The notes beneath the pieces were generated by a model. That model was not told where the DNA came from and made no database searches. It saw only the letters and a list, made by a program, of their open reading frames with translations. Of a DNA stretch of 64,000 nt, positions 14,484 through 63,952 are shown piece by piece. Made by a program: the position numbers and the translations under genes. Within the stretch, counting starts at the first letter, position 1. Every line of letters begins with the position of its first letter. Origin of the DNA: Chrysemys picta bellii (lineage: Eukaryota); contig NC_088791.1 of the NCBI RefSeq assembly GCF_011386835.1, positions 352,284,001-352,348,000 of the forward strand, in the 5' to 3' direction.

Positions 14484-15310
14484 CGCACCCCCCTGCCGCC
14501 CCAACCCTGGGCTCTTCCCCACCATCCGTACCCCCCTGCTGCCCCAGCCCTGGGCTCTCCCCTCCCAACCTGCACCCCCCTGCCACCCCAGCCCTGGGCT
14601 CTCCCCTCCCAACCTGCACCCCCCTGCTGCCCCAGCCCTGGGCTCTCACGCCCCCCACCCGCACCCCCCTGCCGCCCCAGCCCTGGGCTCTCCCCTCCCA
14701 ATCTGCACCCCCCTGCTGCCCCAGCCCTGGGCTCTCACGCCCCCCACCTGCACCCCCCTGCCGCCCCAGCCCTGGGCTCTCCCCTCCCAATCTGCACCCC
14801 CCTGCTGCCCCAGCCCTGGGCTCTCCCCTCCCAGCCTGCACCCCCCTGCTGCCCCAGCCCTGGGCTCTCACACACCCCACCCACACCCCCCTGCCGCCCC
14901 AGCCCTGGGCTCTCCCCCACCACCCGCACGCCCCAGCCCTGGGCTCTCCCCCACCACCTGTACCCCCCTGCCGCCCCAGCCCTGGGCTCTCCCCTCCCAA
15001 CCCACACTCCCCTGCCGCCCCAACCCTGGGCTCTCCCCCACCACCCGCACCCCCCTGCCACCCCAGCCCTGGGCTCTCCCCTCCCAACCCGCACCCCCCT
15101 GCCGCCCCAGGCCTGGGCTCTCCCCTCCCAACCCGCACCCCCCTGCCGCCCCAGCCCTGGGCTCTCCCCTGCCAACCCGCACCCCCCTGCTGCCCCAGCC
15201 CTGGGCTCTCACGCCCCCCACCCACACAACCCCTGCCGCCCAGGCCTGGGCTCTCATCCCCCCACCATTGCCCCCCACACACACCTCCTGCCGCCCCAAC
15301 CCTGGGCTCT
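14484..15310. repeat. GC-rich minisatellite, ~44-bp unit, roughly 19 copies, inside a chimeric MITE
   Basis: Unit ~gccccagccctgggctctcccctcccaacctgcacccccctgct; ctgggctct recurs at 14550, 14594, 14638 and 14683. Flanked by a cagggccggctctagg MITE start (~14406) and a different MITE end (~15808). Confidence 0.95.
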
Positions 15311-45942: not shown

Positions 45943-46305
45943 GGCCTGGTCTACACTACAAGTTTAGGTCGACTTTAGCAGCGTTAAATCGAATTAAGCC
46001 TGGAAACGTCCACACAACGAAGCCCTTTTTTTTGACTTAAGGGCCCTTTAAACTGGTTTCTTTACTCCATCTCCGACAAGGGGATTAGCGCTAAAATCGG
46101 CCTTTGCAGATCGGATTTGGGATAGTGTGGACGGAATTCGACGTTATTGGCCTCCGGGAGCTATCCCACAGTGCTTCATTGTGACCACTCTGGACAGCAC
46201 TCTCAACTCAGATGCACTGACCAGGTAGACAGGAAAAGCCCTGCGAACGTTTGTATTTCATTTCCTGTTTGCCCAGCATGGAGAGCACAGGTGACCACGC
46301 AGAGC

Positions 46306-48331
46306 TCATCAGCACAGGAAACCATGATGGAGTCCCAGGATTGCAAAAGAGCTCCAGCAAGGACAGAACGGGAGGATTGGGATCTGCTCGCCATATGGGG
46401 AGACGAATCAGTGCTAGCTGAACTCCATAGCAGTAAACGAAATGGCAAAATATTAGAAAAAGTTTCAAAGGCCATGAAGGACAGAGGCCATAACAGGGAC
46501 GCACAGCAGTGCCGCATGAAAATTAAGGAGCTAAGGCAAGCCTACCACAAAGCCAGAGAGGCAAATGGAAGGTCTGGGGCAGAGCCGCAAACATGCCGCT
46601 TCTACGTGGAGCTGCATGCCATTCTAGGGGGTGCAGCCACCACTACCCCAACCGTGTGCTTTGACTCCGTCAATAGAGAAACACGCAACAGGGAAGCAGG
46701 TTCGGGGTATGCGGAAGATGATGATGATGATGAAGACAATGAAGATAGCTCACAGCAAGAAAGTGGAGAGACCGGTTTCCCCAACAGCCAGGATATGTTT
46801 ATCACCCTGGACCTGGAACCAGTAACCCCCGAACTCACCCAAGGAGTGCTTCCAGACTCTGAGGGCACACAAGGGAATCTCTGGTGAGTGTACCTTTGTA
46901 AATATTACACATGGTTTAAAAGCAAGCGTATTTAATGATTAACGATTAATTTGCCCTGGCAATCACGGCCAGTACAGCTACTGGAAAAGTCTTTTAACGT
47001 GTATGGGGATGGAGCGGAAATCCTCCAGGGACATCTTCAGAAAGCTCTCCTTCATGTACTCCCAAAACCTTTGCAAAAGGTTTCTGGGGAGGGCTGCCTT
47101 ATCCCGTCCACCATGGTAGGACACTTTACCATGCCAGGCTAGTAGCACGTAGTCTGGAATCATTGCATAACAAAGCATGGCAGCATATGGCCCGGTGTTT
47201 GCTGGCATGCAGACAACATCCATTCCTTATCTCTCTTTGTTATCCTCAGGAGAGTGATATCATTCACGGTCACCTGGTTGAAATGGGGTGATTTTATTAA
47301 GGGGACATTCAGACGTGCCCGTTCCAGCTCGGCTGAACAGAAATGTTCCCCGCTGTTAGCCACGCAGTGCGGGGGGGGAGGGGTGAAGTGATCATCCCAG
47401 AGAATTATGTGTGTATGTGTGTGTGTGGGGGGGGGGGGGTAGTTGGGTTTGTGCTGCATGTTAACCCGGAAAACACAGCCCCTCCTTTTACATTGCAAAC
47501 CCATTTTAAATGGCCAACCCAATGGGTCCTTGGTATGGGAAATGAGGGCGCTGCTGTTTGAAACCATTCCCACATGTTATAAAGGTTAAAAAAGCCAAAA
47601 GACTGTGGCTTACCATGGCTGCCTGCAAGCCGAAATCTGTTGCCTGGCACTGCGTGAGTGATCTCTCATGCCAAACCGTCAGGACCTCAATATAAGAGGA
47701 AAAATGCGACCTTGTAATGAAAGCACATGTGCTGTGTAATGTGAACAGCAAAATTTAACGTGAAAGAGTGTACACATTGTTCTCTTAAATGTGTCTTTTT
47801 TAACCACCTGTCCCTTCTCCTCCACCAGCTGCAAATGTTTCTCCTTCGCAGAGGCTAGCGAAGATTAGAAGGAGAAAACGGAGGACTTGGGATGATATGT
47901 TCACAGAGCTCCAGATGTCCTTCCATGCTGAAAGAGCACAGCAGAATGCGTGGAGGCAGTCAATGTCAGAGTGCAAAAAAGCATAACATGAACGAGAGGA
48001 GAGGTGGCGGGATGAATCGCGGGCTGAACAGAGCAAGTGGCGGGTTGAAGATGATAGGTGGTGTCAGCTTGCAGACAGAAGGCAAGAGTCGATGCTCCGG
48101 CTGCTGGAGCATCAAACTGATATGCTCCAGTGTATGGTTGAGCTGCAGGAAAGGCAGCAGGAGCAGAGACCGCCGCTACAGCCCCTGTGTAACCAACAGC
48201 CCTCCTCCCCAAATCCCATTGCCTCCTCACCCAGATGCCCGAGAACACAGTGGGGGGGCCTCCGGCCACCCAGTCACTCCACCCCAGATGATTGCCCGAG
48301 CATCAGAAGGCTGGCCTTCAATAAGTGTTAA
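46306..48331 (+). pseudogene. Harbinger Myb/SANT-like DNA-binding protein gene (two exons, disabled)
   Basis: KRAPARTERE.WDLLAIWGDESVLAELHSSKRN...QCRMKIKELRQAYHKAREAN..CRFYVELHAILG; donor gtgagt at 46884, acceptor ccag at 47828; splice phases mismatch and in-frame TAA at 47984-47986. Confidence 0.8.
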
Positions 48332-48590
48332 AGTTTTAAAGTTTTAAACTGCAATGTGTCCTTTTCCTTCCCTCCTCCCCCACCCATCCCAGGCTACCTT
48401 GGCAATTATCCCCCTAGTTGTGTGATGAATTAATAAAGAATGCATGAATGAGAAGTAACAATTACTTTATTGCCTCTGCAAGCGGTGCTCGAAGGGGGGA
48501 GGGGAGGGTGGGGTGGTTGGTTTACAGGGAAGTAGAGTGAACCAGAGGGGGGGAGCGGAGGGGTTCATCAAGGAGAAACAAAGAGAAGTT

Positions 48591-49893
48591 TCACACCATA
48601 GCCTGGCCAGTCACAAAACTGGTTTTCAAAGCTTCTCTGATGTGCATCGCGCCCTGCTGTACTCTTCCCTGAGAGGGAAGCCCTGGTGCCTGGCTGCGCG
48701 TAATCAGCGGCCAGACGATTTGCCTCAACCTCCCACCCCGCCATAAATGTCTCCCCCTTACTCTCACAGATATTGTGGAGTGCACAGCGAGCAGCAATAA
48801 CAATGGTGATATTGGTTTCACTGAGGTCTATCCGAGTCAATAGGCTGCGCCAGCGCGCTTTTAAACATCCAAATGCACATTCCACCACAATTCCGCACTT
48901 GCTCAGCCTATAGTTGGACAGGTCCTGACTACTGTCCAGGCTGCCTGTGTACGGCTTCATGAGCCATGTCATTAAGGGGTAGGCTGGGTCCCCAAGGATA
49001 ACAATAGGCATTTCTACATCCCCAACGGTTATTTTCTGGTCCGGGAAGAAAGTCCCTTCCTCCAGCTTTCGAAACAGAGCAGAGTGCCTGAAGACGCGAG
49101 CATCATGTACATTTCCCGGCCATCCCAAGTTGATGTTGGTGAAATGTCCCTTGTGATCCTCCAGGGCTTGCAGCAGCATTGAAAAGTACCCCTTGTGGTT
49201 TATGTACTCGGTGGCTTGTTGCTTCGGTGACAAGATAGGGATATGGCTTCCGTATATCGCCCCACCACAGTTTGGGAATCCCATTGCAGCAAAGCCATCC
49301 ATTATGACTTGCACATTTCCCAGAGTCACTACCCTTGATATCAGCAGGTCTTTGATTGCCCTGGCAACTTGGATCACAGCAGCCCCCACAGTAGATTTGT
49401 CCACTCCAAATTGATTCCCGACTGACCGGTAGCTGTCTGGCATTGCCAGCTTCCACAGGGCTATCGCCACTCGCTTCTCAACTGTGAGGGCTGCTCTCAT
49501 CCTGGTATTCTGACACTTCAGTGCAGGGGAAAGCAAGTCACAAAGTTCCATGAAAGTGCCCTTACACATGCGAAAGTTTTGCAGCCACTGGGAATCGTCC
49601 CACACCTGCAACACGATGCGGTCCCACCAGTCTGTGCTTGTTTCCTGGGCCCAGAATCGGAATTCCACACCATGAACCTGCCCCAGTAACACCATGATTT
49701 GCACATTGCTGGGGCCCGTACTTTGTGAGAGGTCTATGTCAATTTCCTCATCACTGTCATTGCCGCACTGCAATCACCTCTTTGGCTGGTCCTGGTTTTG
49801 CTTTGGCATGTCCTGGCTCTGCATATACTCCAGGACAATGCGCGTGGTGTTCATAGTGCTCATAATTGCCGTGGTGATCTGAGCAGGCTCCAT
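48591..49893 (-). pseudogene. Harbinger (HARBI1-family) DDE transposase, disabled
   Basis: FPNCGGAIYGSHIPI, HDARVF, LGDPAYP, VECAFG.LKARWR. ATG at 49893 is followed by an in-frame TGA (49776-49774); the first catalytic Asp is TAC/Tyr (49254-49252); frameshift near 48660. Confidence 0.92.
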
Positions 49894-51403
49894 GATCCCA
49901 GTGCTATGGCGTTTGGTCTTAAAAAATGCGTGAAACTAGTGTCTGACAGAGGGAGGGAGGGGCGACTGACGACATGGCTTACAGTATAGGGAGTTAAAAT
50001 CAAGAAAGGTGGCTGTGCATCAGGGAGAAACACAAACAACTGTCACACAGAATTGGGCCCCCAAAGATTGAACTCAAAACCCTGGGTTTAGCAGTCCATT
50101 GAATTCATGGAGGGAGGGGGAAGCAAATGAATACAGAACAAATCTATTTTTTACATCTTAAGCTGGCAGCCAATGGTGCAGCGTGACTGATAGCCCTCGG
50201 CATCTTCTGGGTGCTTGGCAGAAAATACTGGGTGCTTGGCAGAAAATAGTGCATTACGACTGATAGCCGCCATCATCATTGGGAAGGCAGCAGAATACGA
50301 CTGGGGGACATATGGAGTTTCAGCCATCATCTGATCAAACTGCTGTATGACGATGACGGATACCAGTCATAATATATGAGCATGGCCGGATTCACTCTTC
50401 TGGGGTCTCTGCATTCCATTAACATTGGCCAGGCACTTCAGCTTCTCCTGGAGGGTTTTCTGGGGGCCAGAGTAAATCACTGGAAGCATTTGGTAACAGT
50501 GAGTTAATAGAGCCTGGTTTTGAGTGAATTTACACATGAAACTCTGGCATTAAATTAAGGATCTGACCCTAAAAAATTGTCCCATATGCTGGAAAGAGGC
50601 AGTTGCATAACTTGAACTGTCAGGGGCGCACAAAAAAATAATTCATGTAATGAAGCTATAAAATACATTTAAAAATAGCTTCAGTGCAGGACAGATAAAT
50701 ACGACTGTTTTCACCATGCACTTGCTATGTTTTTACACACATGGCATGATACAGTGGGACACACTCAGAAGTGGAGGGCCAAAAAGGGTGTCTGTGTGAA
50801 GGGTATAACAGAGTTCAAAAGAGAACTACATAAATTCATGGACGATGGATCACTTGATGATGACCTGTTCTGTTCATTCCCTCTGGGGCACCTGGCCTAA
50901 GCCACTGTCAAAGACGGGATACTGGGCTAGATGGACTTTTGGTCTGACCCAGTATGGCTACTCTTGAGTTTTTATGGTCTAAGGTCACAATTTTAAAATC
51001 ATATAGTGCTCAAGTAGGCTGTGGTATTCACAGCCACAAGGTATCAATGGGGCCAAGAGCTTAGCAGGATTCAAAGATGGACTGATTAACCAGAAAATCC
51101 AATTACAGTAGAGGATTGTTTTTAAAAAGTTTTGGAGAGGCTCTAAACCTTCCTGATTTAGACCACAAAATAACTCTAACTAGTGGGTCTCATAGCTGCC
51201 TAATTAGGGCTTCTTCCACCTTCCTCTGAAGCATCTAGACATATCCACTGGTTACTGGATAGATAGACTTCAAGTCTGATCCAATCTGAATAATCAGATT
51301 CATGTAAATCCAACAGTATGTTTTTGCTTATCTATCTTGAGCTCTGGGAGTCTGTAGGCTTGCACTGAAAGCAAAATGATTTATTGCTAAATATCATCTA
51401 ATC

Positions 51404-51423
51404 TCCTCTTATTTTTCTTTCAG
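51404..51423 (+). promoter_or_regulatory. Splice acceptor for the OR coding exon
   Basis: ctcctcttatttttctttcag, followed by 40 nt before ATG 51464. The paralog has ..ttttcatttag (AG at 62694-62693, -), also 40 nt before its ATG. Confidence 0.75.
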
Positions 51424-51463
51424 GAAGCACATTTCAGAACTCCTCCGACCTGCCCAGTACATT

Positions 51464-52399
51464 ATGTCAGCTGTCAATGACACCAAATTAAAATCTGTAA
51501 TATTCCTTCTCACTGGGCTACTGAGTCATGGAGACACACATCTCTGGATTTCTATTCCTTTTTGCTCGATGTATGTTATTTCGACAGTAGGAAATTCAGT
51601 CATTCTGTTCATTGTAAAAACAGATCCAAGCCTCCATGAGCCCATGTACATTTTCCTTTCCATGTTGGCCATCACAGACCTTTGCATATCGATAACCACC
51701 ATACCCACGATAATGGGCATATACTTGTTTAACTCTAGGGAGATCAGCCTCGGTGCCTGTTTAGCCCAGCTCTTCTTCATCCACTTGCTTCAGTGCATTG
51801 AATCCTGTCTGCTGCTGTTCATGGCCTTTGACCGCTTCATTGCAATTTATAACCCTCTGAGATATGCTTCCATCTTAAACCTGCCGAGAATAACCAAGAT
51901 GGGACTGGTGGCTGTGGTAAGAGCGATGGTCATAATACTTCCACTTCCCTTTCTCCTGAACCGGTTCCAATACTGCCGAGTCAATGTCCTCTCCCATTCC
52001 TTCTGCATGCACCGGGAGGTCATGAACATGGCTTGTTCGGATATCAAAGTCAGCATCATCTATGGTTTGTTTACTAAACTCTTAACAATGGGGTTGGATT
52101 CACTACTCATCTTCCTCTCTTATGTGATGATCCTCAAAACAGTGCTGCGCATCACCACCTACAAGGAGTGCCTGAGGGCCCTGAACACCTGCGTCTGCCA
52201 CCTCTGCACCCTGCTGCTCTTCTACACACCAGAGATCAGCTTGACTGTGATACACAGCTTTGGGAAGGACTCTTATCCCTTACTTCTGATTCTCCTCGGA
52301 TACATCTCCCTGTTTCTCCCACCAATGATGAACCCAATTGTGTACAGCGTGAAAATCAAACATCTTCGTGTGAAGATAATCAGGGTATTCATGAAGTGA
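51464..52399 (+). CDS. Class I olfactory receptor, OR51-like (311 aa), intact ORF
   Basis: LHEPMYIFLSMLA.TDL, MAFDRFIAIYNPLRY, RALNTCVCHL, FYTP, PPMMNPIVYSVK; N-terminal NDT site. Confidence 0.93.
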   Translation: MSAVNDTKLKSVIFLLTGLLSHGDTHLWISIPFCSMYVISTVGNSVILFIVKTDPSLHEPMYIFLSMLAITDLCISITTIPTIMGIYLFNSREISLGACLAQLFFIHLLQCIESCLLLFMAFDRFIAIYNPLRYASILNLPRITKMGLVAVVRAMVIILPLPFLLNRFQYCRVNVLSHSFCMHREVMNMACSDIKVSIIYGLFTKLLTMGLDSLLIFLSYVMILKTVLRITTYKECLRALNTCVCHLCTLLLFYTPEISLTVIHSFGKDSYPLLLILLGYISLFLPPMMNPIVYSVKIKHLRVKIIRVFMK

Positions 52400-55036
52400 G
52401 GGGTCAGTTCACCACCTGGGTCCAGTGACATGGGAGATGTAAATCATGGGCCACCTCTTCCATACTGGACCGCTACATCCAAGATCACATGAGTTATTGA
52501 TCTCTACTATAAAGAGGGGTTCAGATGGGGTTTAAGACTGGTGAAGGGGGACAGGAATGGTGATGGAGGACTGGGCAGTGGGGGAGTGAGACCAAGGCAG
52601 GCAGCAGCATTTACAGAGTGACTTTTTGTGGAGAGCCAGGGGATCGGTTGGATGTTGGACGAAAAACGGTCGTATTAGTGGCCGCTCCGACCTCACAATT
52701 CATGTCGATAATCAATAAAGAGAAGGGATGTGGATGCTGTTTCCCATTAGACCTGGCCTGTCACTGTCCCTTCTCTGGCTATACATCCAAGGACTATTCA
52801 AGGGGCACTGTCACTCAGTCTTCCCATGCACACTCAGCCAGATGCTTGTGTCTGAGTGGTGTCAGGGACATAACTAACACAGGAGAGCCAGGAGAAGCCT
52901 TTCAGGCAAGGCCCCCATTAATGGCTTTGTGCACACCACACCTGCTCAGTCCACTCCCCACTGAGGCAGGGCAGAGCTGCACGTGTGAGTAATGGTCTGA
53001 CACACAGGAGTTGTGGTAAGAGACTCAGGCCTAGGTTCCCTCCCGGTCAGATCCATCTGTGCTGCCCCAGCAATGTGAAACAGAGGAAACTGGTCTCAGC
53101 TCAGGCCCAGCTAGCTCCTATCCCAGCCCAGCCCATTCAGTGTAGGGTGACCACCTTTCCAAAAGGCAAAAGCAGCACACAGGCTGGGAGCCTGGTCCCC
53201 TTGGTGACCCTGCCCCTGCCCCTCTTCTTCCCCCTGGAGGCCCCACGCCCTGCTCCTCCTCCTCCACTGAGGCTCCACATCCTGTCCAGTCCAGAAGCCA
53301 GAGCCAGGCCATAGAAAGAGCTGATCAGGGAGCCGGAGCCTCTGTGAGGAGCCCCAGATCCTCCACCTCCCCTGGGCAAGGGACTGGGGGGACAAGAGAA
53401 TGCCCCAGCCTATGTCCCTGCCCCTCAGGACGCATCCCCAGAGCAAGTGGAGAGACTGGGAATCCCCACAACAGCCTGGGCTCCTGGGGTAGCTGTAACC
53501 GTGCTTTTTTGGGTCACAACTGAAAATATCAAATTCAGGACAAACTGCTGAGAAATAGGGGAGAGAGACCCCGCAAAGTCTCTGGTCGTGGTTATTCTCC
53601 TGTGAGATATACCAAGGATGACCACAGTGAGTGGGGTGAGGTGAGGGAGAAGAGAGGGGCATGGTAAAGGAACTTTTTGTTGTAGAACTCAAGCATATGA
53701 GGTAGAAAACACTGCCCCACATGCACTGTTCTGCTCACAATTTTATGTTTATGAACCCTGCTTGTGGCATTTTCCCTAATTAATATCGGATGACTTCCCT
53801 CCTTTAATTAAAAGTTACTTTCCTACCCTCAGATTTTGTGCTTGCAGGTGGAGAAGTATTGCCTTTCAGGGGCACCAAGGGGTGGGGTGTAATTTTCCCA
53901 GTTTACTGGATGGGGGCTCGAGCTGCTTCTCTGTTGTATTGTTGAAAAGGAACCCCTAGAGATTGAAGGCGGCCCTGGTTGCTGCTGCCTCTACTTGGCA
54001 GAAGGAGGGCATCTGCCAAGCTCCATTGTAAAACCAACTGGGTTGTTTGCTCAACACTGCTCCTGTTGGGAAGCTGTTCCAGAACATCCCTCCTCAGATG
54101 GTCAGAAACCTCCTTCTCCTTTCCAGCCTCAGTTTGCTCCCGGTCAGTTTGTCCCCATTTGTTCTTGTGCCAACACTGTATTTTAGCTTCAGGAGCTTAT
54201 CTCCCTCCCTGGTGTTTACTCCCCTGATATATTTATAGAGGAATTGGATCCCCACTCAGCCTGCCTTGTCTTATGCTAAACCTGCCAAGTTCTTTCAGTC
54301 TTCTCCTAAACCAGGCCCTCCATTGCCCTGACCATGCTCTGCAATTCCAGCCTGAATTCTTCTTTCTGGAATAGGAGTGACCAGAATTTTACACAGTTTG
54401 CCAGAGTAGGTCCCATCAGGGTCTGGTATAAGGATATTAATACTTCCCTTTGTCCTTGACACATTCTAGGATCTCATGTGCCTTGTTCACAGCCGCATCA
54501 CATCGATGTCCCACAGTCGTCGTTGGACTGACTAACACACCCAGGTCTTTCCCCTCCTTTGCTGTTAACAACTTACCCATGGTATATAAATAGGAGTGTA
54601 ATGAATAGAAGTAGGGAAGATTGAAAGCTGAACTGATGACAGTGTACAAGCACTTTCACTGGGATGAAATAGGAGCTATTAACAGGTTCTTTAATCTAGC
54701 AGGGAAAAGTATAACAAGAACCAATGGCTGGTAACTGAAGCCAGAAAAAAAAATACAATTGGAAATGAGGCACCCATTCTTCATAGCAAGGATGCTTAAC
54801 CAGTGGAACAAACTCCCAAGGGAAGTGGTGGATTCTCCAGACATCCCCATATGAAGTTTGGATGCCTTCCTGGAAGATATGTTTTAGATTAATACAAGAG
54901 GTGGTTTAGTCAAACACAAGTCATTGTGCTCATTATGGAGGTAACTGAGTAAAATTATGCAGGACGTCAGATGAGATGATCTTATAATTCCATTTGCCCA
55001 TAAATTCTATGAATCTATGAATAATTTTCTTGAGTG

Positions 55037-55906
55037 TGTTAGGATATAGATATTCAGGCCTGTTTGCAAAGGCCTATACTTTAAGAATTTAGCTAGTTAC
55101 AAAAGTATAATAGAAAGAGTTAAAATCACTGTCTGCTGGTATAACGGTCTTTTCTCACTGTGACAGTCTAAGGCCTTGTTCTAAGCCTAAGGCCTTCGGC
55201 TAAGCAGCAGAGGCAGCCATAAACTGAAAAGTGTATGGTCACATCCTTACATTTCAAACTAGTCACATGGAAATAAGGTGCTATTGGGCTGTTAGGAAAA
55301 CAATCCTGTCCTAATATTTTTATCACCTCCAGAGAAATGTAAGAGCCTAGAAGATGTAAAAGGAAACTTAGTTTGATAGCATCCTGTCTGGCAAGAACTC
55401 ACTTATCAATAGCTGGGATGTAAAATCCTCATTTCTGTATTGTTCTATCACTGTAGTCTCTACTTCCCTATTGTTTGTCTGTATAATCTCTGTCTGATTC
55501 TGTGATTGATTCTGTCTGCTGTATAATTAATTTTGTTGGGTGTAAACCAATTAAGGTGAGGGTATATAATTGGTTAAATAATCATGTTACAATACGTTAG
55601 GATTGGTTAGTTAAATTTCAGTAAAATGATTGGTTAAGGTATAGCTAAGCAAAACTCAAGTTTTACTATATAGTCTGCAGTCAATCAGGAAGTAAGGGGG
55701 GGATGGGAACAGGGACTCAGGCAAGGCTCTGTGGTGTCAGAGCTGGGAAGGGGGACACTGAGGAAGGAACTTGGAATCATTGCTTGCTGGAAGTTGACCC
55801 CAATAAACATCAATTGTTTGCACCTTCGGGCTTCAGGTATTGTTGCTCTCTGTTCATGCGAGAAGGACCAGGGAAGTGAGAGGGTGAAGGAATAAGCCCC
55901 CTAACA
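55037..55906 (+). mobile_element. Solo LTR, 870 bp
   Basis: tgttag...ctaaca terminal inverted repeat; exact 5-bp TSD gagtg at 55032-55036 and 55907-55911; AATAAA at ~55802. Confidence 0.9.
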
Positions 55907-55911
55907 GAGTG

Positions 55912-56645
55912 GATCATTATCTCGGATGCAACATGAACAAGTAGCGACTCTGAATGCTGATAGGCAGTCAGCAAGGACATATGCTGGCCAAGAAGAATCA
56001 GGATTGTCACAATAAAATTCTGATATATGGTCTCTTTACCCTCTAAACTGGGTCTTTGCCTGTCATGACAGGTGAAGAGAAAGTAATTAGGGAATTGTTA
56101 TTTACTCTTTCTCATAACAAAAAAACTAGGGGTCATAAAAATAAATTAATAGGCAGCAACTTTAAAAAAAACATATTTCTTCACACAACACACAGTCAAC
56201 CTGTGGAACTCCTTTCCAAAGGATGTTGTGGCTTCCAAGACTTTAAAATGGTTCAAAAAAGAACAAGTTAGGAGGATTAATGGAGGATAGGTCCATCAAT
56301 GGCTATTAGCCAGGATGGTCAGGGACGGTGTCCCTAGCCTCTGTTTGCCAGAAGTTGGGAATGGGTAACAGGGGATGGATCACTTGATAATTGTCTATTC
56401 TTTCCATTCCTTCTGGGGCATTTGGCATTGGCCATTGTAAGAAGACAAGATACTTGGCTAGATGTAATATCAGTCTCACCCACTGATGCATCCGACGAAG
56501 TGGGCATTCAGCCATGAAAGCTTATGCTCCAATACATCTGTTAGTCTTAAAGGTGCCACAGGACTCTCTGTTGCTTTTTACAGATCCAGACTAACACGGC
56601 TTCCCCTCTGATACAGTCTCACCCAGTATTGCCATTCTTATATTC
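55912..56645 (+). mobile_element. CR1 3' end with a small Penelope insert
   Basis: ..ggaggataggtccatcaatggctattagccaggatgg.. 3'UTR ending gccattcttatattctta. Confidence 0.8.
56483..56613 (+). mobile_element. 131-bp Penelope family B terminus carrying a complete hammerhead-like motif (56488-56527)
   Basis: GCAU-CCGACGA-A-GUGGGCAUUCAGCCAU-GAA-AGCU-U-AUGC; 12-bp TSD cagtctcaccca at 56471-56482 and 56614-56625. Confidence 0.85.
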
Positions 56646-58930
56646 TTAATTATCCCACTCTTAGAGTTTGGAACAACACCCCATCTCTGCTAAATGCTCA
56701 TCACCAAGCAGATCTGACTCAGTCTCTTCCCTTTGGGTACTCATGACCAGAGTTATAAACTCACCTGCAGCCTCCTTAAAACAAGTAGGTTTAGGAGTAA
56801 GGAGCACAAAGCTTTAAGAAATTGGTTTTAAAATAGCAGACAGCTGTCACACATCTACAATATCACTGAAAGCTAAGGTAGACAGGCTTTGCTCTGGAGA
56901 TAGAGAAACAAAACTGGTCCAACTTAAATTCTTTCAGGAAGCCAAGGAACTCTTGGGACCCAGCTTAGTTTCCCTATGTCTCTGACAGCATCTTCCCATC
57001 TGTTTGCCCCTTTCCTGTGGAAGCAGCTTTTGCTGAAACCTGTGTGAGGTTGGCCAACTCGCCATTGTGCTCAGCCGTCTCCATGTTACAGGGCCAAGGC
57101 GTGAAGCTGACCTCTGCCCTCAGACTGCTGTAACTGGTGCTCCTTTCTCCTCAGTTAAATCCATTCAGACTGTGTAGCTTGCAAACACTGGTCCGCTGAC
57201 TGTGCTGAACCAGTTGGAATCCCTGTGATGCTCCAATACTCCCCTCACTGTCAAGCCTGAGCACCACACATTTGCCATGAAAACCAAGGGGCTGGACTCA
57301 TGGGGCATCACAGAATCCAGTTTTTACCGGAGGCTCTGGTGAGAACCTTTTGTAGAGAAATGTCAGAGGTGTTGTTCGTGAAACCCTGAAACAGCCCCGA
57401 TCTTAGAGACTCAGAGTATCTGAGTACCTTGAATGTATTTATCCTCTCTGCAAGGCAGGGCTGGGGTACTATCCACCTGAGTAGAGGCTCAGAGACAACC
57501 AATGGCTTGCCCATGGTCACAGACGACAAGGGAATTAAACGTGCCTGTCCTGAGTCACAGAGCAGTGCCTAGACCACAGCCCCAGGCTTCCAGCCATCTG
57601 AGTGGTGACAGGCCGGGATAGAATCTCTGCTGCACCTGCAGAGCTCCCCCTCCCGGCCATGCTGTACAGAGCGGGGATGGCAAGGAGCCAGTTACAGAGG
57701 TTTGATTCTCTGGCTTGTTCTCCCCCTGCCTCAGCAGAGTTTAGAGCAGCCTGGGCACTTGGCTAACCTCTGCCTGATTTTAAAAGCTTCAAAGAGCTCA
57801 GCACACTCTGGCCATCTTCCTGTGGATCAGGGCCCCCACAGAGTGCACCCTGGGGGCTTGAGGTAGCCCTACAGACACCCTGCCCTTCCCTCTAAGGTTC
57901 TTGCAATGGCTTACTCTCAGGCTGGAATATTCAAAACAAGAGCTCCCATTGAGGGGTCACATTTATTCAGTCTTCTCCAAAACACAAGGTCTCCTACCCT
58001 CCAACTTGACCAGTCTGATTTACTCATGAACACCCTAACATCCTTGCTGCTGGTGTCAGCATTGCTTCAGACTTTCTGCAAACCCTTTTCCCTTGAGCCC
58101 CTCCCCGCATCTCTTACCACTAGGCCCTGCCCCCTGCTGATCCACTTCCCCTGAGGCTCCACCTCCAGGCCATGCCAGAGCCAGGCCATGGTAAGAGCTA
58201 CTGTGATGTTCTTTGATCAAAATATGACCATATACATCACTTTTGCAACCACTGTTATATATTTGCAACACACTTGGACAAAATGTGGCATGTAAGATGT
58301 CTATGAAAAGGTTATGATTTGCTGGTTATAGCTGTGCTAACTGTATGCATGTATCATTCTTGTATTTGAAAGTATAACTATTGGCTCTATACCTGGATTT
58401 TAAATGTTTGCTCCTGGGGTAATGCCCACAAACTAGTTAGTCTGCAAATCTTGGAGGGATTATTCAAATTAAGGGCTCATCAAGAAACACTTAACTGACA
58501 ATGGACCATGGGAGACGCCCATCTACACGGAATGGACTGTCCTGCAAATGTACTGTCCGGGTATAGGTAATGGTTTCCTGCTGTGACTAAGAAAAATTAT
58601 GATGGACATGTGATTGGCCATGTGATTCCAAACCCCCACTTGTCACCTGCAATTTTCCACTGGCTGTGCTGAGGGTTTTGTTTAAAACAATGGGTTTCCC
58701 TCCACATGGCAGATGCTATAAAAGGTTGTAAAAGAAAACACCTCCATTTGGCTTCTTTCCTGCTCAAGCCTCAGAACAATGAATTGATACTAACGGGAGC
58801 ATTCTAACCAGTGGACTGAGGTCCTGCCAATCATTTTTAAGCAACTAGAGACTTATCAAGCCAGCAGCTTATTCCTTCACTGCTACAAACCCGAAATAAG
58901 AACTTTGCATTTTTTGTACGTATTTGACTC

Positions 58931-59510
58931 TGTAACAGGGTGCTGGCCAGGAGGCACTGAGCCAGGCCTCTGTTAGCCCAGCTCCAATTAAGAAGTATTA
59001 ATTGGGGCTGGCTGGGTATGCCACGCCTAATTAGTGAAACAGAAGCACCAGCGGGCCTTATTAGCCAGGGGACTATATAAAGCTGACAGGAAGGCAGCAA
59101 AGGTGGGGCAGTGGTAAAGAGCAAGGAAAGGGAAGTGCTCCAGGCTGTGCATCCCTGCTTGCTGGAGAAGCTAGCTGTCCTCCAGGTTGCTGGTTTGCAA
59201 CTGTCTGTAACTAGAAGGTGGTGGGAGTTGACAGTGTTGATAGGAGGGATAGCTCAGTGGTTTGGGCATTGGCCTGCTAAACCCAGGGTTGTGAGTTCAA
59301 TCCTTAAGGGGGCCACTTAGGGATCTAGGGCAAAATCAGTACTTGGTCCTGCTAGTGAAGGCGGGGGTCTGGACTCCTTGACCTTTCAAGGTCCCTTCCA
59401 GTTCTAGGAGATGGGATATCTCCATTAATTTAATAAAAGAAGCACTGGTGATTGCACTTGGAGGAGGTCTCTGACTGATTTGCTCAAGGGCAAGTGAAGG
59501 CCTTGTTACA
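58931..59510 (+). mobile_element. Solo LTR (LTR-C) nested in LTR-A
   Basis: Perfect 7-bp terminal inverted repeat tgtaaca...tgttaca; flanks gactc/ggctc (5-bp TSD with one mismatch). Confidence 0.7.
59243..59432 (+). mobile_element. tRNA-derived SINE with CR1-type tail
   Basis: A box tagctcagtgg (59250-59260), B box gagttcaatcc (59293-59303), then ..gacctttcaaggtcccttccagttcta CR1-like 3' end. Confidence 0.88.
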
Positions 59511-59929
59511 GGCTCCTTTAACCAATTATCAGTCTTCCCTTTCTTTCTTTCTTTATAAAAAAAGCTTTAGATTAGAGATAACAAAGGATTGGCATCATCA
59601 TGATTTTTGGGTAAGATCTCAGTTATATACTGACCTGCATGTGCGGCTGGTCCTTTGGGATCAAATGAACCAGTTATTACATTAAATTTGTTTTAAAGAT
59701 CCACTCATCTTTAAATCTAGTGTTTTGGGGGATATTAGGGCTGGAATATCTAAGGAAACTGCTTTTATGACTTCTTGTTAGCCATTGTGGTGAAACAGAA
59801 GTTAATTTTGTATTTCTGCTTTGGTATATCTCATGGGAGAATAACCACCAGTTTGGGGGTCTGTTTGCCCTGTTTCTCAGCAGTTTGTCCTGAATTTGGT
59901 ATTCACAGTTGTGACCCACCAAAGCATCG

Positions 59930-60582
59930 TGTGACAGACCTAGACCAGTGGGGTACAGGAGTCTGGTAGAGGGCAAATATACTGGTCACTGGATGAGTAG
60001 TTTCTGTTCCCTGAGTGACCAGAGCAGGGGCTGCACTAGAGCAATCAGGAACCTGCTAGAACCAGTTAAGGCAGGCAGGCTAATTAGGACACCTGCAGTC
60101 AATTAAGAAGCTGCTAGACTCAATTAAGGCAGGCTAATCAGGGCACCTGGGTTTTAAAAAGGAGCTCACTTCAGTTTGTGGTGCAAGTGTGAGGAGCTTA
60201 GAGCAAGAGAAGCAAGGAGCTGAGTGGGAGGGGGAGGACTGAGGAGCGCAAGCGTTATCAGACACCAGGAGGAAGGTCCTGTGGTGAGACTAAGGAAGGT
60301 GTTTGGAGGAGGCCATGGGGAAGTAGCCCAGGGAGTTGTAGCTGTCATGCAGCTGTTACAGGAGGCACTATAGACAGCTGGAGTCCACAGGGCCCTGGGC
60401 TGGAACCTGAAGTAGAGGGTGGGCCTGAGTTCACCCCAAACCTCCCAATTGATCTGGACTGTGGGTTCTTCCAGAGGGGAAGGTTTCTGGGCTGTTCCTC
60501 AACCCACATGGTGAATCTCTGAGTCAAGAAAATCCACCAATAAGTGCAGGACCCACTATGATAGAGGAGGAACTTTGTCACA
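59930..60582 (+). mobile_element. Solo LTR (LTR-B) nested in the 3' tip of LTR-A
   Basis: Perfect tgtgaca...tgtcaca ends; flanks atcg/atgg (4-bp TSD with one mismatch); empty site in arm 1 near 53500. Confidence 0.82.
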
Positions 60583-61716
60583 ATGGTTACAGCTACCCTG
60601 GGAGCCCAGGCTGCCGTGGGGATTCCTAGACTCTCCATCTTCTCTGGGGATGTGCCCTGACGGGCAGAGACATAGGCTAGGGCATTCTCTTGTCCCCCTT
60701 GCCCAGGGCAGATGGAGGATCTGCGGCTCCTCACAGAGGCTCTGGTTCCCTGATGAGCTCTTTCCATGGCCTGGCTCTGGCTTCTTCCTGGACAGGGGGT
60801 GGAGCTTCAGTAGAAGACGAGGAGCAGGGAGTGGGACCTCAAGGGGGAGAAAGGGGTCAGGGTCACTGAGTGGATCTGGGTCCCGGCCTGTGTCCCACTT
60901 TTACCTTTTGAAAGGTACACTCAATGTGCTGGGCTGGGATAGGAGCTAGCTGGGGCAGCACAAATAGAGCGCACGGGGAGGGAACCTAGGCCTGAGTCTC
61001 TTACCAGGACTCCTGTGTGTCAGACCATTACTCACACATGCAGCTCTGCCCTGCCTCAGTGGGGAGTGGACTGAGCAGATGTGCTGTGTGCAAAGCCATT
61101 AATGGAGGGGTTGCCTGAATGGTTTCTCCCGGCGCTCCTCTGTTAATCATGTCCCTGACACCACTCAGTCTCAAGCACCGGACTGAGTGTGCAGGGGAAC
61201 TCTCAGTGACCATGCCCCTTGAATAGCCCCGGTCCCCAGCTGGTGCAGTACCCATGGGTCATGCTGAAGTCAGAAATGGCCAGGACTGCTACAGCAGAAC
61301 AGCTCTGCAGCTTTTTTCATAGTCCTTGGATGTTTAGCCAGACATGGGACAGTGACAAGCCAGGTGTCATGGGAAACAGCATCCACATCCCCTCTCTTTA
61401 TTCACTATTAACAGATATTGTGGGGTCGAAGTGGCCACGAATATGGCTCTTTTTGGGCCAACATCCCACGGATCCCCAGGCTCTCCACAAAAAGTCGCTC
61501 TGTAAATGCTGATGGCTGCCTTCGTCTTCCTCCCCCATTGTCCAGTCTTCCTTCACAATCCCTGTCCCCACTCATCAGCCCTAGATGCTGTTTGAACCTC
61601 TCTATATAGTGGAGATCAGTAACTCATGTCATCTCGGGTGCAAAGGTCCAGGACAGAATAGGTGGCCCATGTTTTTCGTCTCCCATGTCACTGGACCAAG
61701 GTGGTGAACTGACCCT

Positions 61717-62652
61717 TCACTTCATGAATACCCTGATTATCCTCACGCGAAGGTGTTTGCTTTTCACACTGTACACAATTGGGTTCATCAGCGGGGGGAG
61801 AAGCAGGGAGATGTAGCCCAGGACAATCTGAAGTAAGGGATGAAAGCCCTTCTCAAAGCTGTGTACCACAGTCAAGCTGATCTCTGGTGTGTAGAAGAGC
61901 AGGAGGGCACAGAGGTGGGAGACACAGGTGTTCAGAGCCCTCAGGCACTCCTCGTGGGATCCGATGCTCAGCACTGTTTTGAGGATCATCACGTAAGAGA
62001 GGAAGATGAGCAGCGAGTCCAACCCCATTGTTAAGAGTTGAGTAAACAATCGATAGATGATGTTGACTGTGATATCTGAACAAGCCATGTTCATGACCTC
62101 CCGGTGCATACAGTAGGAATAGGAGAGGACATTGGCTCGACAGTAGTGGAACCGTTTCAGGAGAAAGGGAAGTGGAAGTATTATGACCATCGCTCTTAGC
62201 ACAGCCAGCAGTCCCATCTTGGCTATTCTCGGCAGGGTTAAGATGGAAGGATATCTCAGCGGGTTATAAATCGCGATGAAGCGGTCAAAAGCCATCAACA
62301 ACAGCAGAGAGGATTCAATGCAATGAAGCAAGTGGATGAAAAAGAGCTGGGCTAAACAGGCATCAAGGCTGATCTCCCTAGAGTTAAACAAATATATGCC
62401 CAGTATCGTTGGTATGGTGGTTATCAATATGCCAAGGTCTGTGACGGCCAACATGGAAAGGAAAATATACATGGGCTCACGGAGGCTTGGATCTGTTTTT
62501 ACAATGAACACAATGACTGAATTTCCTATTATTGAAATAACATACATGAAGCAGAATGGGATAGAAATCCAGAGATGTGCATCTCCATGACTCGGTAGCC
62601 CGGTGAAAAGGAATATTACAGATTTTAATTTGGTGTCATTGACAGCTGACAT
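61717..62652 (-). CDS. Class I olfactory receptor, OR51-like (311 aa), intact ORF
   Basis: Ungapped paralog of 51464..52399; MAFDRFIAIYNPLRY, RALNTCVSHL, PPLMNPIVYSVK. Confidence 0.92.
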   Translation of the reverse strand: MSAVNDTKLKSVIFLFTGLPSHGDAHLWISIPFCFMYVISIIGNSVIVFIVKTDPSLREPMYIFLSMLAVTDLGILITTIPTILGIYLFNSREISLDACLAQLFFIHLLHCIESSLLLLMAFDRFIAIYNPLRYPSILTLPRIAKMGLLAVLRAMVIILPLPFLLKRFHYCRANVLSYSYCMHREVMNMACSDITVNIIYRLFTQLLTMGLDSLLIFLSYVMILKTVLSIGSHEECLRALNTCVSHLCALLLFYTPEISLTVVHSFEKGFHPLLQIVLGYISLLLPPLMNPIVYSVKSKHLRVRIIRVFMK

Positions 62653-63952
62653 AATGTACTGGGAAGGTCCGAGGAGTTCTGCAATGTCCTTTCTAAATGA
62701 AAAGTAAGAGAAGATTAGTTGATATTTAGCAAGTAATCATTCTGCTCTCAGTGCAGGCCTACAGACTCCCAGACCTCAAGATAGATAAGCAAAACATACT
62801 CTAGGATTTACATGGATCTGATTAGTCAGACAGGATCGGACTTGTAGTCTATCTACCCCAGTAACCAGTTGCCATGTCCAGATACTTCAGATGAGGTAGA
62901 AGAAGCCCTGAAATAGACAGCTATGAGATAACAGATAACCTGCTCCCAGGGTGTTTCCCCCTGATACCCACTAGTTAGAAATACTTAGTGGTGTAAATCA
63001 GGAAGGTTTAGAGCCTCTCCAAAAGTTTTTAAAAACAATCCTCTACTGTAATTGGATTTTCAGATTACTCAGTCCCCCTTGGAATCCTGCTAAGCTCTTG
63101 GCCACATTGATATCTTGTGGCTGTGAATTCCACAGCCTACTTGAATACTGTATGATTTTACTATTATGACCTTAGAACATACAAACATAAGAGTGGCCAT
63201 ACTGGGTGAGACAAAAGGTCCATCTGTCTTCGACAGTGGTTTATACCAGGTGCCCCAGAGAGAATGGGGAGAACAGGTCATCATCAAGTGATCCATCACC
63301 TATGAATTTCTGTAGTACTCATTTGAACCCTGATACACCTTCACACAGACACCTTTTCTGGCTCTCCACTTCTGAGCATGGCCCCTTGTATCATGACATG
63401 TGTGTAAACATATGGCAAGATTATGGTGAAAACGGTCGTTGTATTTCTGTCCTGCAGTGAAGCTATTTTTAAATGTCTTTTATAGCTTCAGTATGTGAAA
63501 TATTTTTTTGTGTGCCCCTGACAGTACAGGTCATGCAGCTGCGTCTTTCCAGCATATGGGATACATTTTTAGGGTCAAGTTTTTAATTCAATAACAGTGA
63601 TATCAACTGCCTCCGGACAGACTTTCATGTGTAAATTCAATCAGAACCAGGCTCTATTAACTCACCCGTACCAAAAGCTTCCAGTGATATACTCTGGCCC
63701 CCAAGAAACCCTCCAAGAGAGGCTGAAGTGATTTGCATGGCCAATGTTGATGGAATGCAGAGACTTTGATCATCCTACAGGCTTCTCTTTATACCCCTGG
63801 GACCTGAATCCTCTGCCCATGCAACAGTCTGTAGATATTTGGAAAATTACAAGCTGACACTGACAGTTATTTCAGCTGGGCAGGAGAGGAGCTGGCATCG
63901 TAAATGGTCAGTACTTCAAACACGGGTATTGCACTAATATCCACTGAAGTGT

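What the first reader, a model, noticed from the sequence alone, without database searches (positions are those of the whole stretch)
52013..62103. Apparent relocation of the carboxylate counter-ion: Arg6.59->Ser with Gln45.53->Arg in both OR51-like receptors
Seen: TM6 reads LTVIHSFG / LTVVHSFE (AGC at 52256-52258 and 61860-61858) where class I ORs have HRFG. ECL2 reads CMHREVM (CGG at 52013-52015 and 62103-62101) where OR51s have CxHQ(D/E)VM. The OR52 trio keeps its Arg (TYRF). Established: in OR51E2, R262 (6x59) is the carboxylate counter-ion and Q181 (45x53) hydrogen-bonds the same group. Inference: the Arg moved from TM6 to ECL2 before duplication, which could be a compensatory pocket architecture or a shift in ligand class. 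Both ORFs stayed open and ungapped despite dozens of substitutions, arguing against a dead ancestor. Both also share AIC->AIY after DRF.
Basis: partly seen in the sequence, partly recalled or inferred. Interest (0 to 1): 0.8.

Follow-up and report, generated by a model that had tools for sequence, protein, structure and literature searches.

The report
Turtle smell receptors with relocated arginine
Two intact turtle odorant-receptor genes belong to an old, conserved receptor subfamily that lost the arginine normally used to grip acidic odorants and carries an arginine on a neighbouring loop instead; whether that loop arginine took over the job is plausible but untested.

Summary
ORF A (51464-52399, +) and ORF B (61717-62652, -) are intact 311-aa class I OR51-type receptors. 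Both have Arg (CGG) at ECL2 45.53 and Ser (AGC) at TM6 6.59, mapped without gaps onto OR51E2 Q181 and R262.

The pair is not unique. Both genes sit in one subclade (37 cluster representatives, six cryptodiran families) of the turtle-specific "OR51G2-like" expansion. Among 209 family members the 45.53/6.59 states are QR 135, RR 22, RS 28, RY 9 and RT 1. No gene lacks R6.59 without also having R45.53.

The loss of R6.59 traces to a single event: AGA to AGC, then Tyr or Thr from Ser. The one apparent second case is a recombinant. So the covariation rests on n=1.

Outside turtles, R6.59 is often lost without R45.53. Within turtles, R45.53 arose repeatedly while R6.59 was kept.

Changes that accompany the loss:
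- S5.36I, a known contact of R6.59
- S6.55T
- new acidic residues in ECL3
- R5.39 in B

The whole family also has K5.43 and E/D6.51.

dN/dS is 0.19-0.39. Expression could not be settled.

Charge relocation is plausible (about 0.4) but unproven. This is a new variant of a known kind, of moderate interest.

The parts
51464..52399 (+). OR gene A: intact 311-aa class I OR51-type ('OR51G2-like') receptor
   Evidence: ORF. Pfam 7tm_4 at 6.5e-105. consOR51 at 1e-114 and OR51E2 at 1e-89. AF2 model pLDDT 87.9, TM-score 0.89 to 8uxv and 8f76. 98% identical to the Trachemys ortholog, dN/dS 0.19.
61717..62652 (-). OR gene B: paralog of A, convergent orientation, 85% aa identity
   Evidence: Pfam 7tm_4 at 1.6e-106. 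dN/dS versus A is 0.39, bootstrap interval 0.24-0.63. dN/dS versus the Chrysemys ortholog P0026 is 0.34.
52013..52015 (+). A codon 184, CGG = Arg at ECL2 45.53 (OR51E2 Q181)
   Evidence: One transition from the family's CAG (Gln). It is a CpG codon.
62101..62103 (-). B codon 184, CGG = Arg 45.53
52256..52258 (+). A codon 265, AGC = Ser at TM6 6.59 (OR51E2 R262)
   Evidence: Relatives that keep Arg use AGA, so this is one step.
61858..61860 (-). B codon 265, AGC = Ser 6.59
52055..52057 (+). A codon 198, ATC = Ile at 5.36. Relatives with R6.59 have Ser (AGC). B equivalent at 62059-62061.
   Evidence: Best discriminator of the subclade after 6.59 itself (I/V in 38/38, against S in 141 of the 171 others). 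One of only two fixed nucleotide differences. In active OR52cs, position 5.36 packs against R6.59.
52244..52246 (+). A codon 261, ACT = Thr at 6.55 (OR51E2 S258, which hydrogen-bonds the carboxylate). B equivalent at 61870-61872.
   Evidence: T in 31/38 of the subclade, against S in 155/171 of the others.
52268..52270 (+). A codon 269, GAC = Asp in ECL3. An acidic residue specific to the Ser-6.59 genes.
   Evidence: 25 of 28 Ser-6.59 genes have E267 and/or D269. About 1 of 171 R6.59 genes has an acid at these two sites. ECL3 spans 267-271 in the AF2 model.
61852..61854 (-). B codon 267, GAG = Glu in ECL3
62050..62052 (-). B codon 201 = Arg at 5.39 (OR51E2 G198)
   Evidence: R5.39 occurs in 12 of 209 genes, and 11 of those lie in the non-R6.59 subclade.
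52232..52234 (+). A codon 257, GAG = Glu at 6.51 (OR51E2 L254). Family-wide acidic pocket residue. B equivalent at 61882-61884.
   Evidence: E or D in 187/209 turtle-clade genes. L254 is listed among the ligand-contacting residues of OR51E2.
52076..52078 (+). A codon 205, AAA = Lys at 5.43 (OR51E2 I202, a chain-length selectivity site). B has Gln at 62038-62040.
   Evidence: K in 145/209. The 5.43 site determines fatty-acid length preference in OR51E1 and contacts the aliphatic chain in OR51E2.
50434..53572 (+). Arm 1 of the inverted duplication that carries gene A
   Evidence: Inverted-repeat pairs I1-I10, 84-92% complementary.
59856..63730 (-). Arm 2 of the inverted duplication that carries gene B
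   Evidence: The same convergent pair is present in Trachemys (L001) and Chrysemys (L002).

Best explanation
A and B are functional, selectively maintained class I (OR51-type) odorant receptor genes of an emydid turtle. They belong to one old subclade of the turtle-specific 'OR51G2-like' expansion. In that subclade the TM6 arginine 6.59 was replaced once (AGA to AGC, giving Ser; later Tyr or Thr in some copies). The replacement happened in a gene that also carries Arg at ECL2 45.53 (CAG to CGG). It came with Ser-to-Ile at 5.36, the residue that packs against R6.59 in active OR52cs. It also came with Ser-to-Thr at 6.55 and new acidic residues in ECL3. All of this is shown. The following is inferred: the positive charge at the pocket mouth is now supplied from ECL2 by the H45.52-R45.53 pair. 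That pair would bind the odorant's anionic group, close the ECL2-ECL3 gate against the TM6 hydroxyls and the new ECL3 acids, or do both. The receptor would then still sense anionic (carboxylate-type) ligands through a re-wired latch.
For: Position mapping is ungapped onto OR51E2 and consOR51.

States in 209 family members are QR 135, RR 22, RS 28, RY 9 and RT 1. None combines non-R6.59 with a 45.53 residue other than Arg.

The 37 non-R6.59 genes form one clade: SH-aLRT 83 and 94. With 8 trait sites removed, the tree that holds them together is 41 lnL better than the free quick tree, p-AU 0.83. The clade spans Chelydridae, both sea-turtle families, Emydidae, Geoemydidae and Testudinidae (species names).

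R45.53 is invariant in all 38 non-R6.59 genes. It was CGG, a CpG codon, in all 10 whose DNA was read. There are 0 changes at 45.53 over 2.1 substitutions/site inside the clade against 15 over 10.3 outside, giving P(0) about 0.05.

The only two fixed nucleotide differences between 9 subclade genes and 3 close relatives are R6.59S and S5.36I; none is synonymous. In active OR52cs, 5.36 contacts R6.59 and H45.52 also binds the carboxylate.

H45.52 is present in 57 of 60 R45.53 genes against 101 of 149 others.

Net charge over nine pocket-mouth sites averages +0.46 in the ancestral type, +1.45 in RR genes and +0.37 in the subclade.

ECL3 acids occur in 25 of 28 Ser-6.59 genes.

In OR51E2, Q181 touches both the carboxylate and R262, so a longer basic side chain at that site can plausibly reach the same spot.

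dN/dS is 0.19-0.39 and the gene pair is syntenic across species.
Against: The loss of R6.59 is a single evolutionary event. The only apparent replicate, P0095, is a recombinant: 10 of 150 differences from its sister in the N-terminal half against 29 of 161 in the C-terminal half, where it resembles the subclade. Its Thr codon ACC is one step from AGC.

R45.53 arose several times with R6.59 kept, and it is equally invariant in a 16-gene RR clade. It therefore has a role of its own.

The count of R-to-other reversals outside the subclade is between 1 and 3, depending on how parsimony is resolved, so the rate contrast is weak.

Elsewhere in class I, R6.59 is lost without R45.53: at least 11 OR51-like clusters and 29% of human class I ORs.

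Other basic residues could be the anchor instead: K5.43 in 37 of 38 subclade genes, and R5.39 in B.

In the published mechanism the ligand activates the receptor by pulling R6.59, and with it TM6, inward. An Arg on ECL2 does not do that by itself.

Confidence: 0.4

Rival explanations
1. Change of ligand class. The subclade gave up the TM6 carboxylate anchor and now recognises non-acid or otherwise different ligands. The pocket is defined by K5.43, E/D6.51, T6.55 and I5.36. R45.53 is a structural or gate residue that pairs with ECL3 or ECL2 acids, not a ligand counter-ion.
For: Several pocket and mouth sites changed together, not just the Arg: 5.36, 6.55, 6.58 H/Q, the ECL3 acids, and 5.39 in B. 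Nine genes have Tyr at 6.59 and no ECL3 acid, which suggests further functional divergence. The published activation mechanism needs R6.59 to couple ligand binding to TM6. 29% of human class I ORs lack R6.59. E/D6.51 and K5.43 already make this family's pocket atypical.
Against: H3.33, I4.57, L4.60, H45.52 and a hydroxyl at 6.55 all belong to the acid-binding pocket of OR51E2 and OR52cs, and all are retained. Net charge returns to the ancestral value rather than becoming neutral or negative. R45.53 is strictly kept.
Confidence: 0.3
2. Historical coincidence with no functional coupling. R45.53 was simply the allele present, as it is in about a quarter of related genes, when R6.59 was lost once. 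Both states were then inherited together by all descendants.
For: There is one event only. R45.53 is common and recurrent in the family (22 RR genes, roughly 5-7 gains). It is just as stable in an RR clade. R6.59 loss elsewhere shows no association with 45.53.
Against: No reversion of a CpG-containing CGG codon across 38 genes and 2.1 substitutions/site. The accompanying change at the known 6.59 contact 5.36, and the ECL3 charge gain, point to a coordinated remodelling of exactly this interface.
Confidence: 0.25
3. The genes are decaying or non-functional copies whose anchor loss is tolerated because they no longer work.
For: No expression evidence could be obtained. A has a degenerate N-terminal P-G-L-E motif.
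Against: The reading frames are open and ungapped in all ten subclade coding sequences read from six species, including this window's genome. dN/dS is well below 1. All conserved OR motifs and the class I R4.52-D5.50 pair are intact. The subclade has been retained and has expanded across six turtle families.
Confidence: 0.03

Closest known systems
Human OR51E2 (PDB 8f76), propionate receptor
   Same: Same fold (TM-score 0.89). 45% identity in the structure-based alignment, and the sequence alignment is ungapped. Shares H3.33, aliphatic residues at 4.57 and 4.60, H45.52, a hydroxyl at 6.55, the R4.52-D5.50 pair and the F-Y-x-P pivot.
   Different: OR51E2 has R262 at 6.59 as counter-ion and activation lever, and Q181 at 45.53. 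A and B have Ser and Arg at those sites. A and B also have Glu at 6.51 (OR51E2 has Leu), Lys or Gln at 5.43 (Ile), Ile at 5.36 (Val), and acidic residues in ECL3.
consOR51 (8uxv) and the mammalian OR51G subfamily ('OR51G2-like' is the annotation name of the turtle orthologs)
   Same: Best solved-structure match (E 1e-114; 58% identity in the Foldseek structural alignment). The ECL2 motif C-x-H-x-(D/E)-V-M is conserved.
   Different: consOR51 has Q45.53, R6.59, Met at 6.51 and Val at 5.43. The turtle genes form their own lineage-specific expansion; the best 120 hits of each of two searches (209 full-length family members kept for analysis) were all turtle proteins.
OR52cs (8hti), octanoate-bound consensus OR52
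   Same: Class I fold. In it the carboxylate is bound by R6.59 together with H45.52, and R6.59 packs on I5.36 and the 6.55 backbone. These are the same positions that changed together here.
   Different: OR52cs keeps R6.59. The window's own three OR52-type genes do too.
Class II OR activation latch: Y6.55 with D/E45.51
   Same: An ECL2-to-TM6 polar contact next to the odorant that couples binding to inward movement of TM6. It is the same kind of solution I propose for R45.53 with T6.55, S6.59 and the ECL3 acids.
   Different: The residues and polarity differ. Class II ORs have no conserved charge anchor for the ligand. A and B are clearly class I by sequence.
Counter-ion displacement in opsins (Glu181 in ECL2 versus Glu113 in TM3). 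From my own knowledge, not checked here.
   Same: A class A GPCR family in which the charged partner of the ligand sits on ECL2 in some lineages and on a transmembrane helix in others.
   Different: A different family, an acidic rather than basic residue, a covalently bound ligand, and experimental proof. Here the relocation is only inferred.
The known turtle class I OR expansion
   Same: Turtles gained class I ORs massively, and the genes cluster at one end of chromosome 1. The loci fetched here lie at 4.9 Mb of the Dermochelys chromosome and about 340-351 Mb of 348-360 Mb in Trachemys and Chrysemys.
   Different: Those papers count genes. None that I found describes pocket residues or the 45.53/6.59 states.

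Membership tests
Vertebrate class I (OR51/52-type) odorant receptor | 7tm_4 olfactory receptor domain and class A GPCR fold | tested here: met
   Pfam PF13853 at 6.5e-105 (A) and 1.6e-106 (B). AF2 model pLDDT 87.9. TM-score 0.89 to consOR51, OR51E2 and OR52c.
Vertebrate class I (OR51/52-type) odorant receptor | Conserved OR motifs: G-N in TM1, P-M-Y-x-F-L, M-A-F-D-R-F, the C3.25-C45.50 cysteines, F-Y-x-P, N-P-x-x-Y | tested here: met
   Read in the translations. C99, C181, D123, R124, F253, N290, P291 and Y294 are invariant or nearly invariant in the 61-sequence alignment.
Vertebrate class I (OR51/52-type) odorant receptor | Class I-specific intramembrane pair R4.52-D5.50 | tested here: met
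   R153 and D212 in A, B and essentially all relatives. The pair is described as class I-specific.
Vertebrate class I (OR51/52-type) odorant receptor | Closer to class I than to class II receptors | tested here: met
   E 1e-114 to 1e-89 for consOR51, OR52c and OR51E2, against 1e-40 or weaker for class II consensus ORs.
Vertebrate class I (OR51/52-type) odorant receptor | Transcribed in olfactory sensory neurons | tested here: inconclusive
   No run on record as RNA holds the gene. Four runs of unknown library type give only short, low-depth contigs inside the CDS. Family-conserved k-mers in low-coverage DNA would explain this equally well.
Carboxylic-acid-tuned class I OR using the OR51E2/OR52cs mechanism | Arg at 6.59 as counter-ion and TM6 lever | tested here: not met
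   Ser (AGC) in A and B.
Carboxylic-acid-tuned class I OR using the OR51E2/OR52cs mechanism | Polar helpers of the carboxylate: a hydroxyl at 6.55, His at 45.52, Gln at 45.53 | tested here: inconclusive
   T6.55 and H45.52 are present. 45.53 is Arg instead of Gln.
Carboxylic-acid-tuned class I OR using the OR51E2/OR52cs mechanism | Aliphatic tail pocket: H3.33, aliphatic residues at 4.57, 4.60 and 5.43 | tested here: inconclusive
   H107, I158 and L161 fit. 5.43 is Lys in A and Gln in B, and 6.51 is Glu, which is not aliphatic.
Carboxylic-acid-tuned class I OR using the OR51E2/OR52cs mechanism | Activation by carboxylic acids | not testable with these tools
   Needs cell-based assays. No fatty-acid ligand or model coordinates are available from the tools.

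The most novel reading that the evidence does not exclude
This turtle subclade is a natural case of counter-ion and gate relocation in an odorant receptor. The cationic partner of the ligand's carboxylate has moved from TM6 (6.59) to ECL2 (45.53). The ECL2-ECL3 gate has swapped polarity: Arg on ECL2, Glu or Asp on ECL3. TM6 is now coupled through hydroxyls (T6.55, S/Y6.59) and a repacked I5.36. Extant neighbouring genes (Q/R, R/R, R/S, R/Y) would preserve the evolutionary intermediates within a single gene array.
Probability: 0.3. Interest if true: 0.7.

Novelty: new variant of a known kind. Interest (0 to 1): 0.5.

Why it matters
R6.59 is currently presented as the defining anchor and activation lever of class I odorant receptors. 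This subfamily has lived without it for roughly the age of the hard-shelled cryptodiran turtles, remains under purifying selection, and keeps an Arg on the opposite side of the pocket mouth. It gives a ready-made natural experiment. Its close relatives show all four states (Q/R, R/R, R/S, R/Y), and in Chrysemys genes of all four states sit in one tandem array. Swapping one or two residues in cell assays would test whether acid recognition and TM6 activation can be uncoupled from 6.59. It would also help assign ligands to the unusually large, undeorphanised turtle class I repertoire, whose pocket (K5.43, E/D6.51) differs from every solved class I receptor.

Tried and rejected
1. A second independent loss of R6.59 (P0095 of Emys, R/T). 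Rejected. The protein is a mosaic: it is close to its Q/R sister over residues 1-150 and close to the subclade afterwards. Its ACC codon derives from AGC.

2. Tyr-6.59 genes as independent losses. Rejected on the codon path: TAC is 2 steps from AGC and 3 from AGA.

3. The worry that the clade is an artefact of the trait sites. Quick trees built from half-alignments, or without 8 trait sites, scattered the 37 genes. But the constrained tree is 41 lnL better than that free tree, p-AU 0.83. So the scatter came from a poor quick search and weak signal.

4. Expression. No RNA run on record holds the gene. Laying four runs of unknown type gave short, low-depth contigs confined to the CDS. I read this as conserved family k-mers in low-coverage DNA, not as transcripts.

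5. The 50%-identity representative search gave many fragments and fusions. It was useful only as a coarse survey.

6. Measuring distances from R184 to the pocket, D269 or E257. Not possible, because the structure tool returns no coordinates. No docking tool or fatty-acid ligand is offered.

7. Earlier scan notes. Nothing relevant.


Full report
**Observation.** The window holds two 311-aa ORFs with no stops: A at 51464-52399 (+) and B at 61717-62652 (-). They align without gaps at 263/311 residues and 90.8% nucleotide identity. A reads C-M-H-R-E-V-M, with CGG at 52013-52015, and V-I-H-S-F-G, with AGC at 52256-52258. B uses the same two codons at the mirrored coordinates. The phmmer alignment to OR51E2 (8f76) is ungapped across residues 12-309. 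It puts R184 on Q181 (45.53) and S265 on R262 (6.59); consOR51 shows Q and R in those columns. Two qualifications come from the same paper. Q181A does not abolish the response, and R6.59 is present in only 71% of human class I ORs.

**What the genes are.** Both are class I OR51-type receptors.
- Pfam 7tm_4 scores about 1e-105.
- The best solved relatives are consOR51 (1e-114), OR52c and OR51E2.
- An AlphaFold2 model of A has pLDDT 87.9 and TM-score 0.89 to those structures. TM6 ends at residue 266, ECL3 spans 267-271 and TM5 starts at 195.
- All canonical OR motifs and the class I R4.52-D5.50 pair are intact.

The two genes are the arms of an inverted duplication of about 3.1-3.9 kb at 84-92% identity. 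The same convergent pair, about 9-10 kb apart, exists in Trachemys scripta and Chrysemys picta. The closest database protein is 98% identical (Trachemys), so the genome is an emydid turtle.

**Family context.** The best 120 hits of each of two protein searches were all turtle "OR51G2-like" proteins of at least 73% identity, from hard-shelled cryptodires and softshells. This is the known turtle class I expansion. Among 209 full-length members the 45.53/6.59 states are Q/R 135, R/R 22, R/S 28, R/Y 9, R/T 1, and other/R 14. None lacks R6.59 without having R45.53.

On trees built without the two columns, 37 of the 38 non-R6.59 genes form one clade (SH-aLRT 83 and 94). It contains both A and B in separate sublineages, each with orthologs in other families. 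Quick trees from half-alignments, or with eight trait sites removed, scattered these genes. But the tree that holds them together is 41 log-likelihood units better than that free tree, p-AU 0.83. A single clade is therefore the best reading. It spans Macrochelys, Caretta, Dermochelys, Emys, Chrysemys, Trachemys, Mauremys, Pangshura and Gopherus (names). From my knowledge of turtle phylogeny, that places the origin before the split of the hard-shelled cryptodiran families, on the order of 100 million years ago.

**One event, not many.** Relatives that keep the Arg encode it as AGA. Ser is AGC, one step away. The Thr of P0095 is ACC, one step from AGC and two from AGA. Tyr is TAC, two steps from AGC and three from AGA. 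Every R45.53 read is CGG, against CAG for Gln. P0095, the only non-R6.59 gene outside the clade, is a mosaic. It differs from its Q/R sister at 10 of 150 positions in the N-terminal half and 29 of 161 in the C-terminal half (p=0.003). Against a subclade member the pattern reverses (p=0.007). It also carries the subclade's I5.36 and T6.55. The R45.53/non-R6.59 combination therefore arose once and was inherited or copied.

**What else changed.**
- The best discriminators of the subclade are 6.59, then 5.36 (Ile/Val in 38 of 38, against Ser in most others), then 6.55 (Thr in 31 of 38, against Ser).
- Between nine subclade coding sequences and three close relatives, the only fixed nucleotide differences are R6.59S and S5.36I. 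None is synonymous.
- In the active OR52cs structure, R6.59 packs on I5.36 and on the 6.55 backbone, and H45.52 shares the carboxylate. The co-changing sites are therefore a known contact set.
- 25 of 28 Ser-6.59 genes gained Glu at 267 and/or Asp at 269 in ECL3 (A has D269, B has E267). The Tyr-6.59 genes did not. R6.59 genes almost never have an acid at these two sites.
- B and ten relatives also gained Arg at 5.39, the OR51E2 G198 position that faces R262.
- The whole turtle family has Lys at 5.43 (145 of 209) and Glu or Asp at 6.51 (187 of 209). In OR51E2 these are I202 and L254, both of which contact the ligand.
- Summed formal charge over nine pocket-mouth sites averages +0.46 in the ancestral type, +1.45 in R/R genes and +0.37 in the subclade.

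**Selection.**

| Comparison | dN/dS |
|---|---|
| A versus B | 0.39 (bootstrap 0.24-0.63) |
| A versus Trachemys ortholog | 0.19 |
| B versus Chrysemys ortholog | 0.34 |
| A or B versus the sea-turtle (Dermochelys) gene | 0.28-0.31 |
| A or B versus the snapping-turtle (Macrochelys) gene | 0.43-0.48 |

The genes are maintained. R45.53 never changes within the subclade: 0 changes over 2.1 substitutions/site, against 15 over 10.3 elsewhere in the family, so P(0) is about 0.05. This holds although CGG is a CpG codon whose commonest mutation would restore Gln. The contrast is weak for two reasons. Reversals out of Arg elsewhere number only 1 to 3, depending on parsimony resolution. A 16-gene R/R clade keeps R45.53 just as faithfully.

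**Wider survey.** About 105 representatives of 50%-identity clusters cover both sites. Among them R45.53 appears only in one fragment of this same turtle family. At least eleven OR51-like clusters lack R6.59 while having Q or P at 45.53. R45.53 is therefore nearly confined to turtles, and loss of R6.59 does not generally require it.

**Interpretation.** Shown: an old, conserved, expanding receptor subfamily whose pocket mouth carries Arg on ECL2 and no Arg on TM6, with coordinated changes at the residues that normally cradle R6.59.

Inferred, and my preferred reading (about 0.4): the positive charge was first duplicated, giving R/R genes that still exist next door. In the Chrysemys array the order is R/Y, R/R, Q/R, B, A. 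The TM6 copy was then dropped. The H45.52-R45.53 pair now binds the anionic group and latches ECL2 to ECL3 and TM6 through the new acids and hydroxyls. This fits the OR51E2 gate model, in which Q181 and R262 bond across the ECL2-ECL3 gate.

The main rivals are a real change of ligand class (about 0.3) and mere co-inheritance without coupling (about 0.25). Decay is very unlikely (about 0.03). An ECL2 Arg cannot by itself pull TM6 inward as R6.59 does.

**Expression.** No run on record as RNA holds the gene. Contigs from four runs of unknown library type cover only short pieces inside the CDS at depth 2-14, while the unique flanks are empty. With roughly a hundred paralogs sharing conserved 31-mers, low-coverage DNA would give the same picture. 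I count this as no evidence either way.

**Novelty.** The genes themselves are annotated in related species, and the turtle class I expansion is known. I found no paper that describes an ECL2 arginine, a missing 6.59 arginine in a conserved clade, or the K5.43/E6.51 pocket. I rate this as a new variant of a known kind. It is a good, cheap experimental lead, not a demonstrated mechanism.

Noticed in passing
window 52076-52078 and 52232-52234 (A); 62038-62040 and 61882-61884 (B): The whole turtle OR51G2-like family has Lys at 5.43 (145/209) and Glu or Asp at 6.51 (187/209). OR51E2 and consOR51 have aliphatic residues there, lining the odorant's tail pocket. K with E/D co-occurs in 133 of 209 genes. 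This may be a TM5-TM6 salt bridge or a site for bifunctional (dicarboxylic or zwitterionic) ligands. It may matter more for ligand class than the 45.53/6.59 pair.
   Followed up: partly
window 62050-62052 (B, codon 201): B has Arg at 5.39 (G198 in OR51E2, which faces R262 across the pocket mouth) together with Gln instead of Lys at 5.43. R5.39 occurs in 12 of 209 family genes, and 11 of those lie in the non-R6.59 subclade. This is a second candidate replacement for the lost positive charge.
   Followed up: partly
L005:10001-10936 (Emys orbicularis, P0095): Mosaic OR gene. The N-terminal half is like a Q/R paralog and the C-terminal half is like the R/S subclade, with Thr (ACC) at 6.59. This is likely gene conversion or recombination between tandem paralogs, carrying the ECL2-to-TM6 segment as a cassette.
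   Followed up: yes
L006, L007, L009, L002 (Chrysemys picta CM062318.1, about 350.99-351.07 Mb): Genes with the R/Y, R/R, Q/R and R/S (B) and R/S (A) states lie in that order in one tandem array at 17-26 kb spacing between the first four, with A about 10 kb beyond B. Natural intermediates are therefore physical neighbours.
   Followed up: partly
window 46147-46887 (+) and 48568-49773 (-): A Harbinger/PIF-type DNA transposon with its two usual genes lies 1.7 kb upstream of gene A. One is a Myb/SANT-like protein (PF13837, 1e-14). The other is a DDE_Tnp_4 transposase (PF13359, 4e-29), as a 401-aa open frame.
   Followed up: partly
window 14483-15266: A GC-rich tandem repeat (44-bp unit, about 18 copies, 85% matches) lies between two OR52 genes. 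It produces the spurious 316-358-aa proline/glycine-rich ORFs on both strands.
   Followed up: partly
window 33117-33863 (-): A 248-aa ORF with reverse-transcriptase-like motifs and no Pfam hit at E<=0.001. Probably a decayed retroelement fragment.
   Followed up: no
window 51515-51535 (A, residues 18-24): The N-terminal class I motif (G-I-P-G-L-E in consOR51) is degenerate in this subclade: A reads G-L-L-S-H-G-D and B reads G-L-P-S-H-G-D. The significance is unknown.
   Followed up: no
window 51334-52515 versus flanks 50349-50742, 51137-51333 and 52516-52900: In four public runs of unrecorded library type, contigs cover only parts of the OR coding sequence and none of the unique flanks. Transposon parts reach depths in the thousands. 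The likely cause is family-conserved k-mers in low-coverage DNA, but low-level transcription is not excluded.
   Followed up: partly
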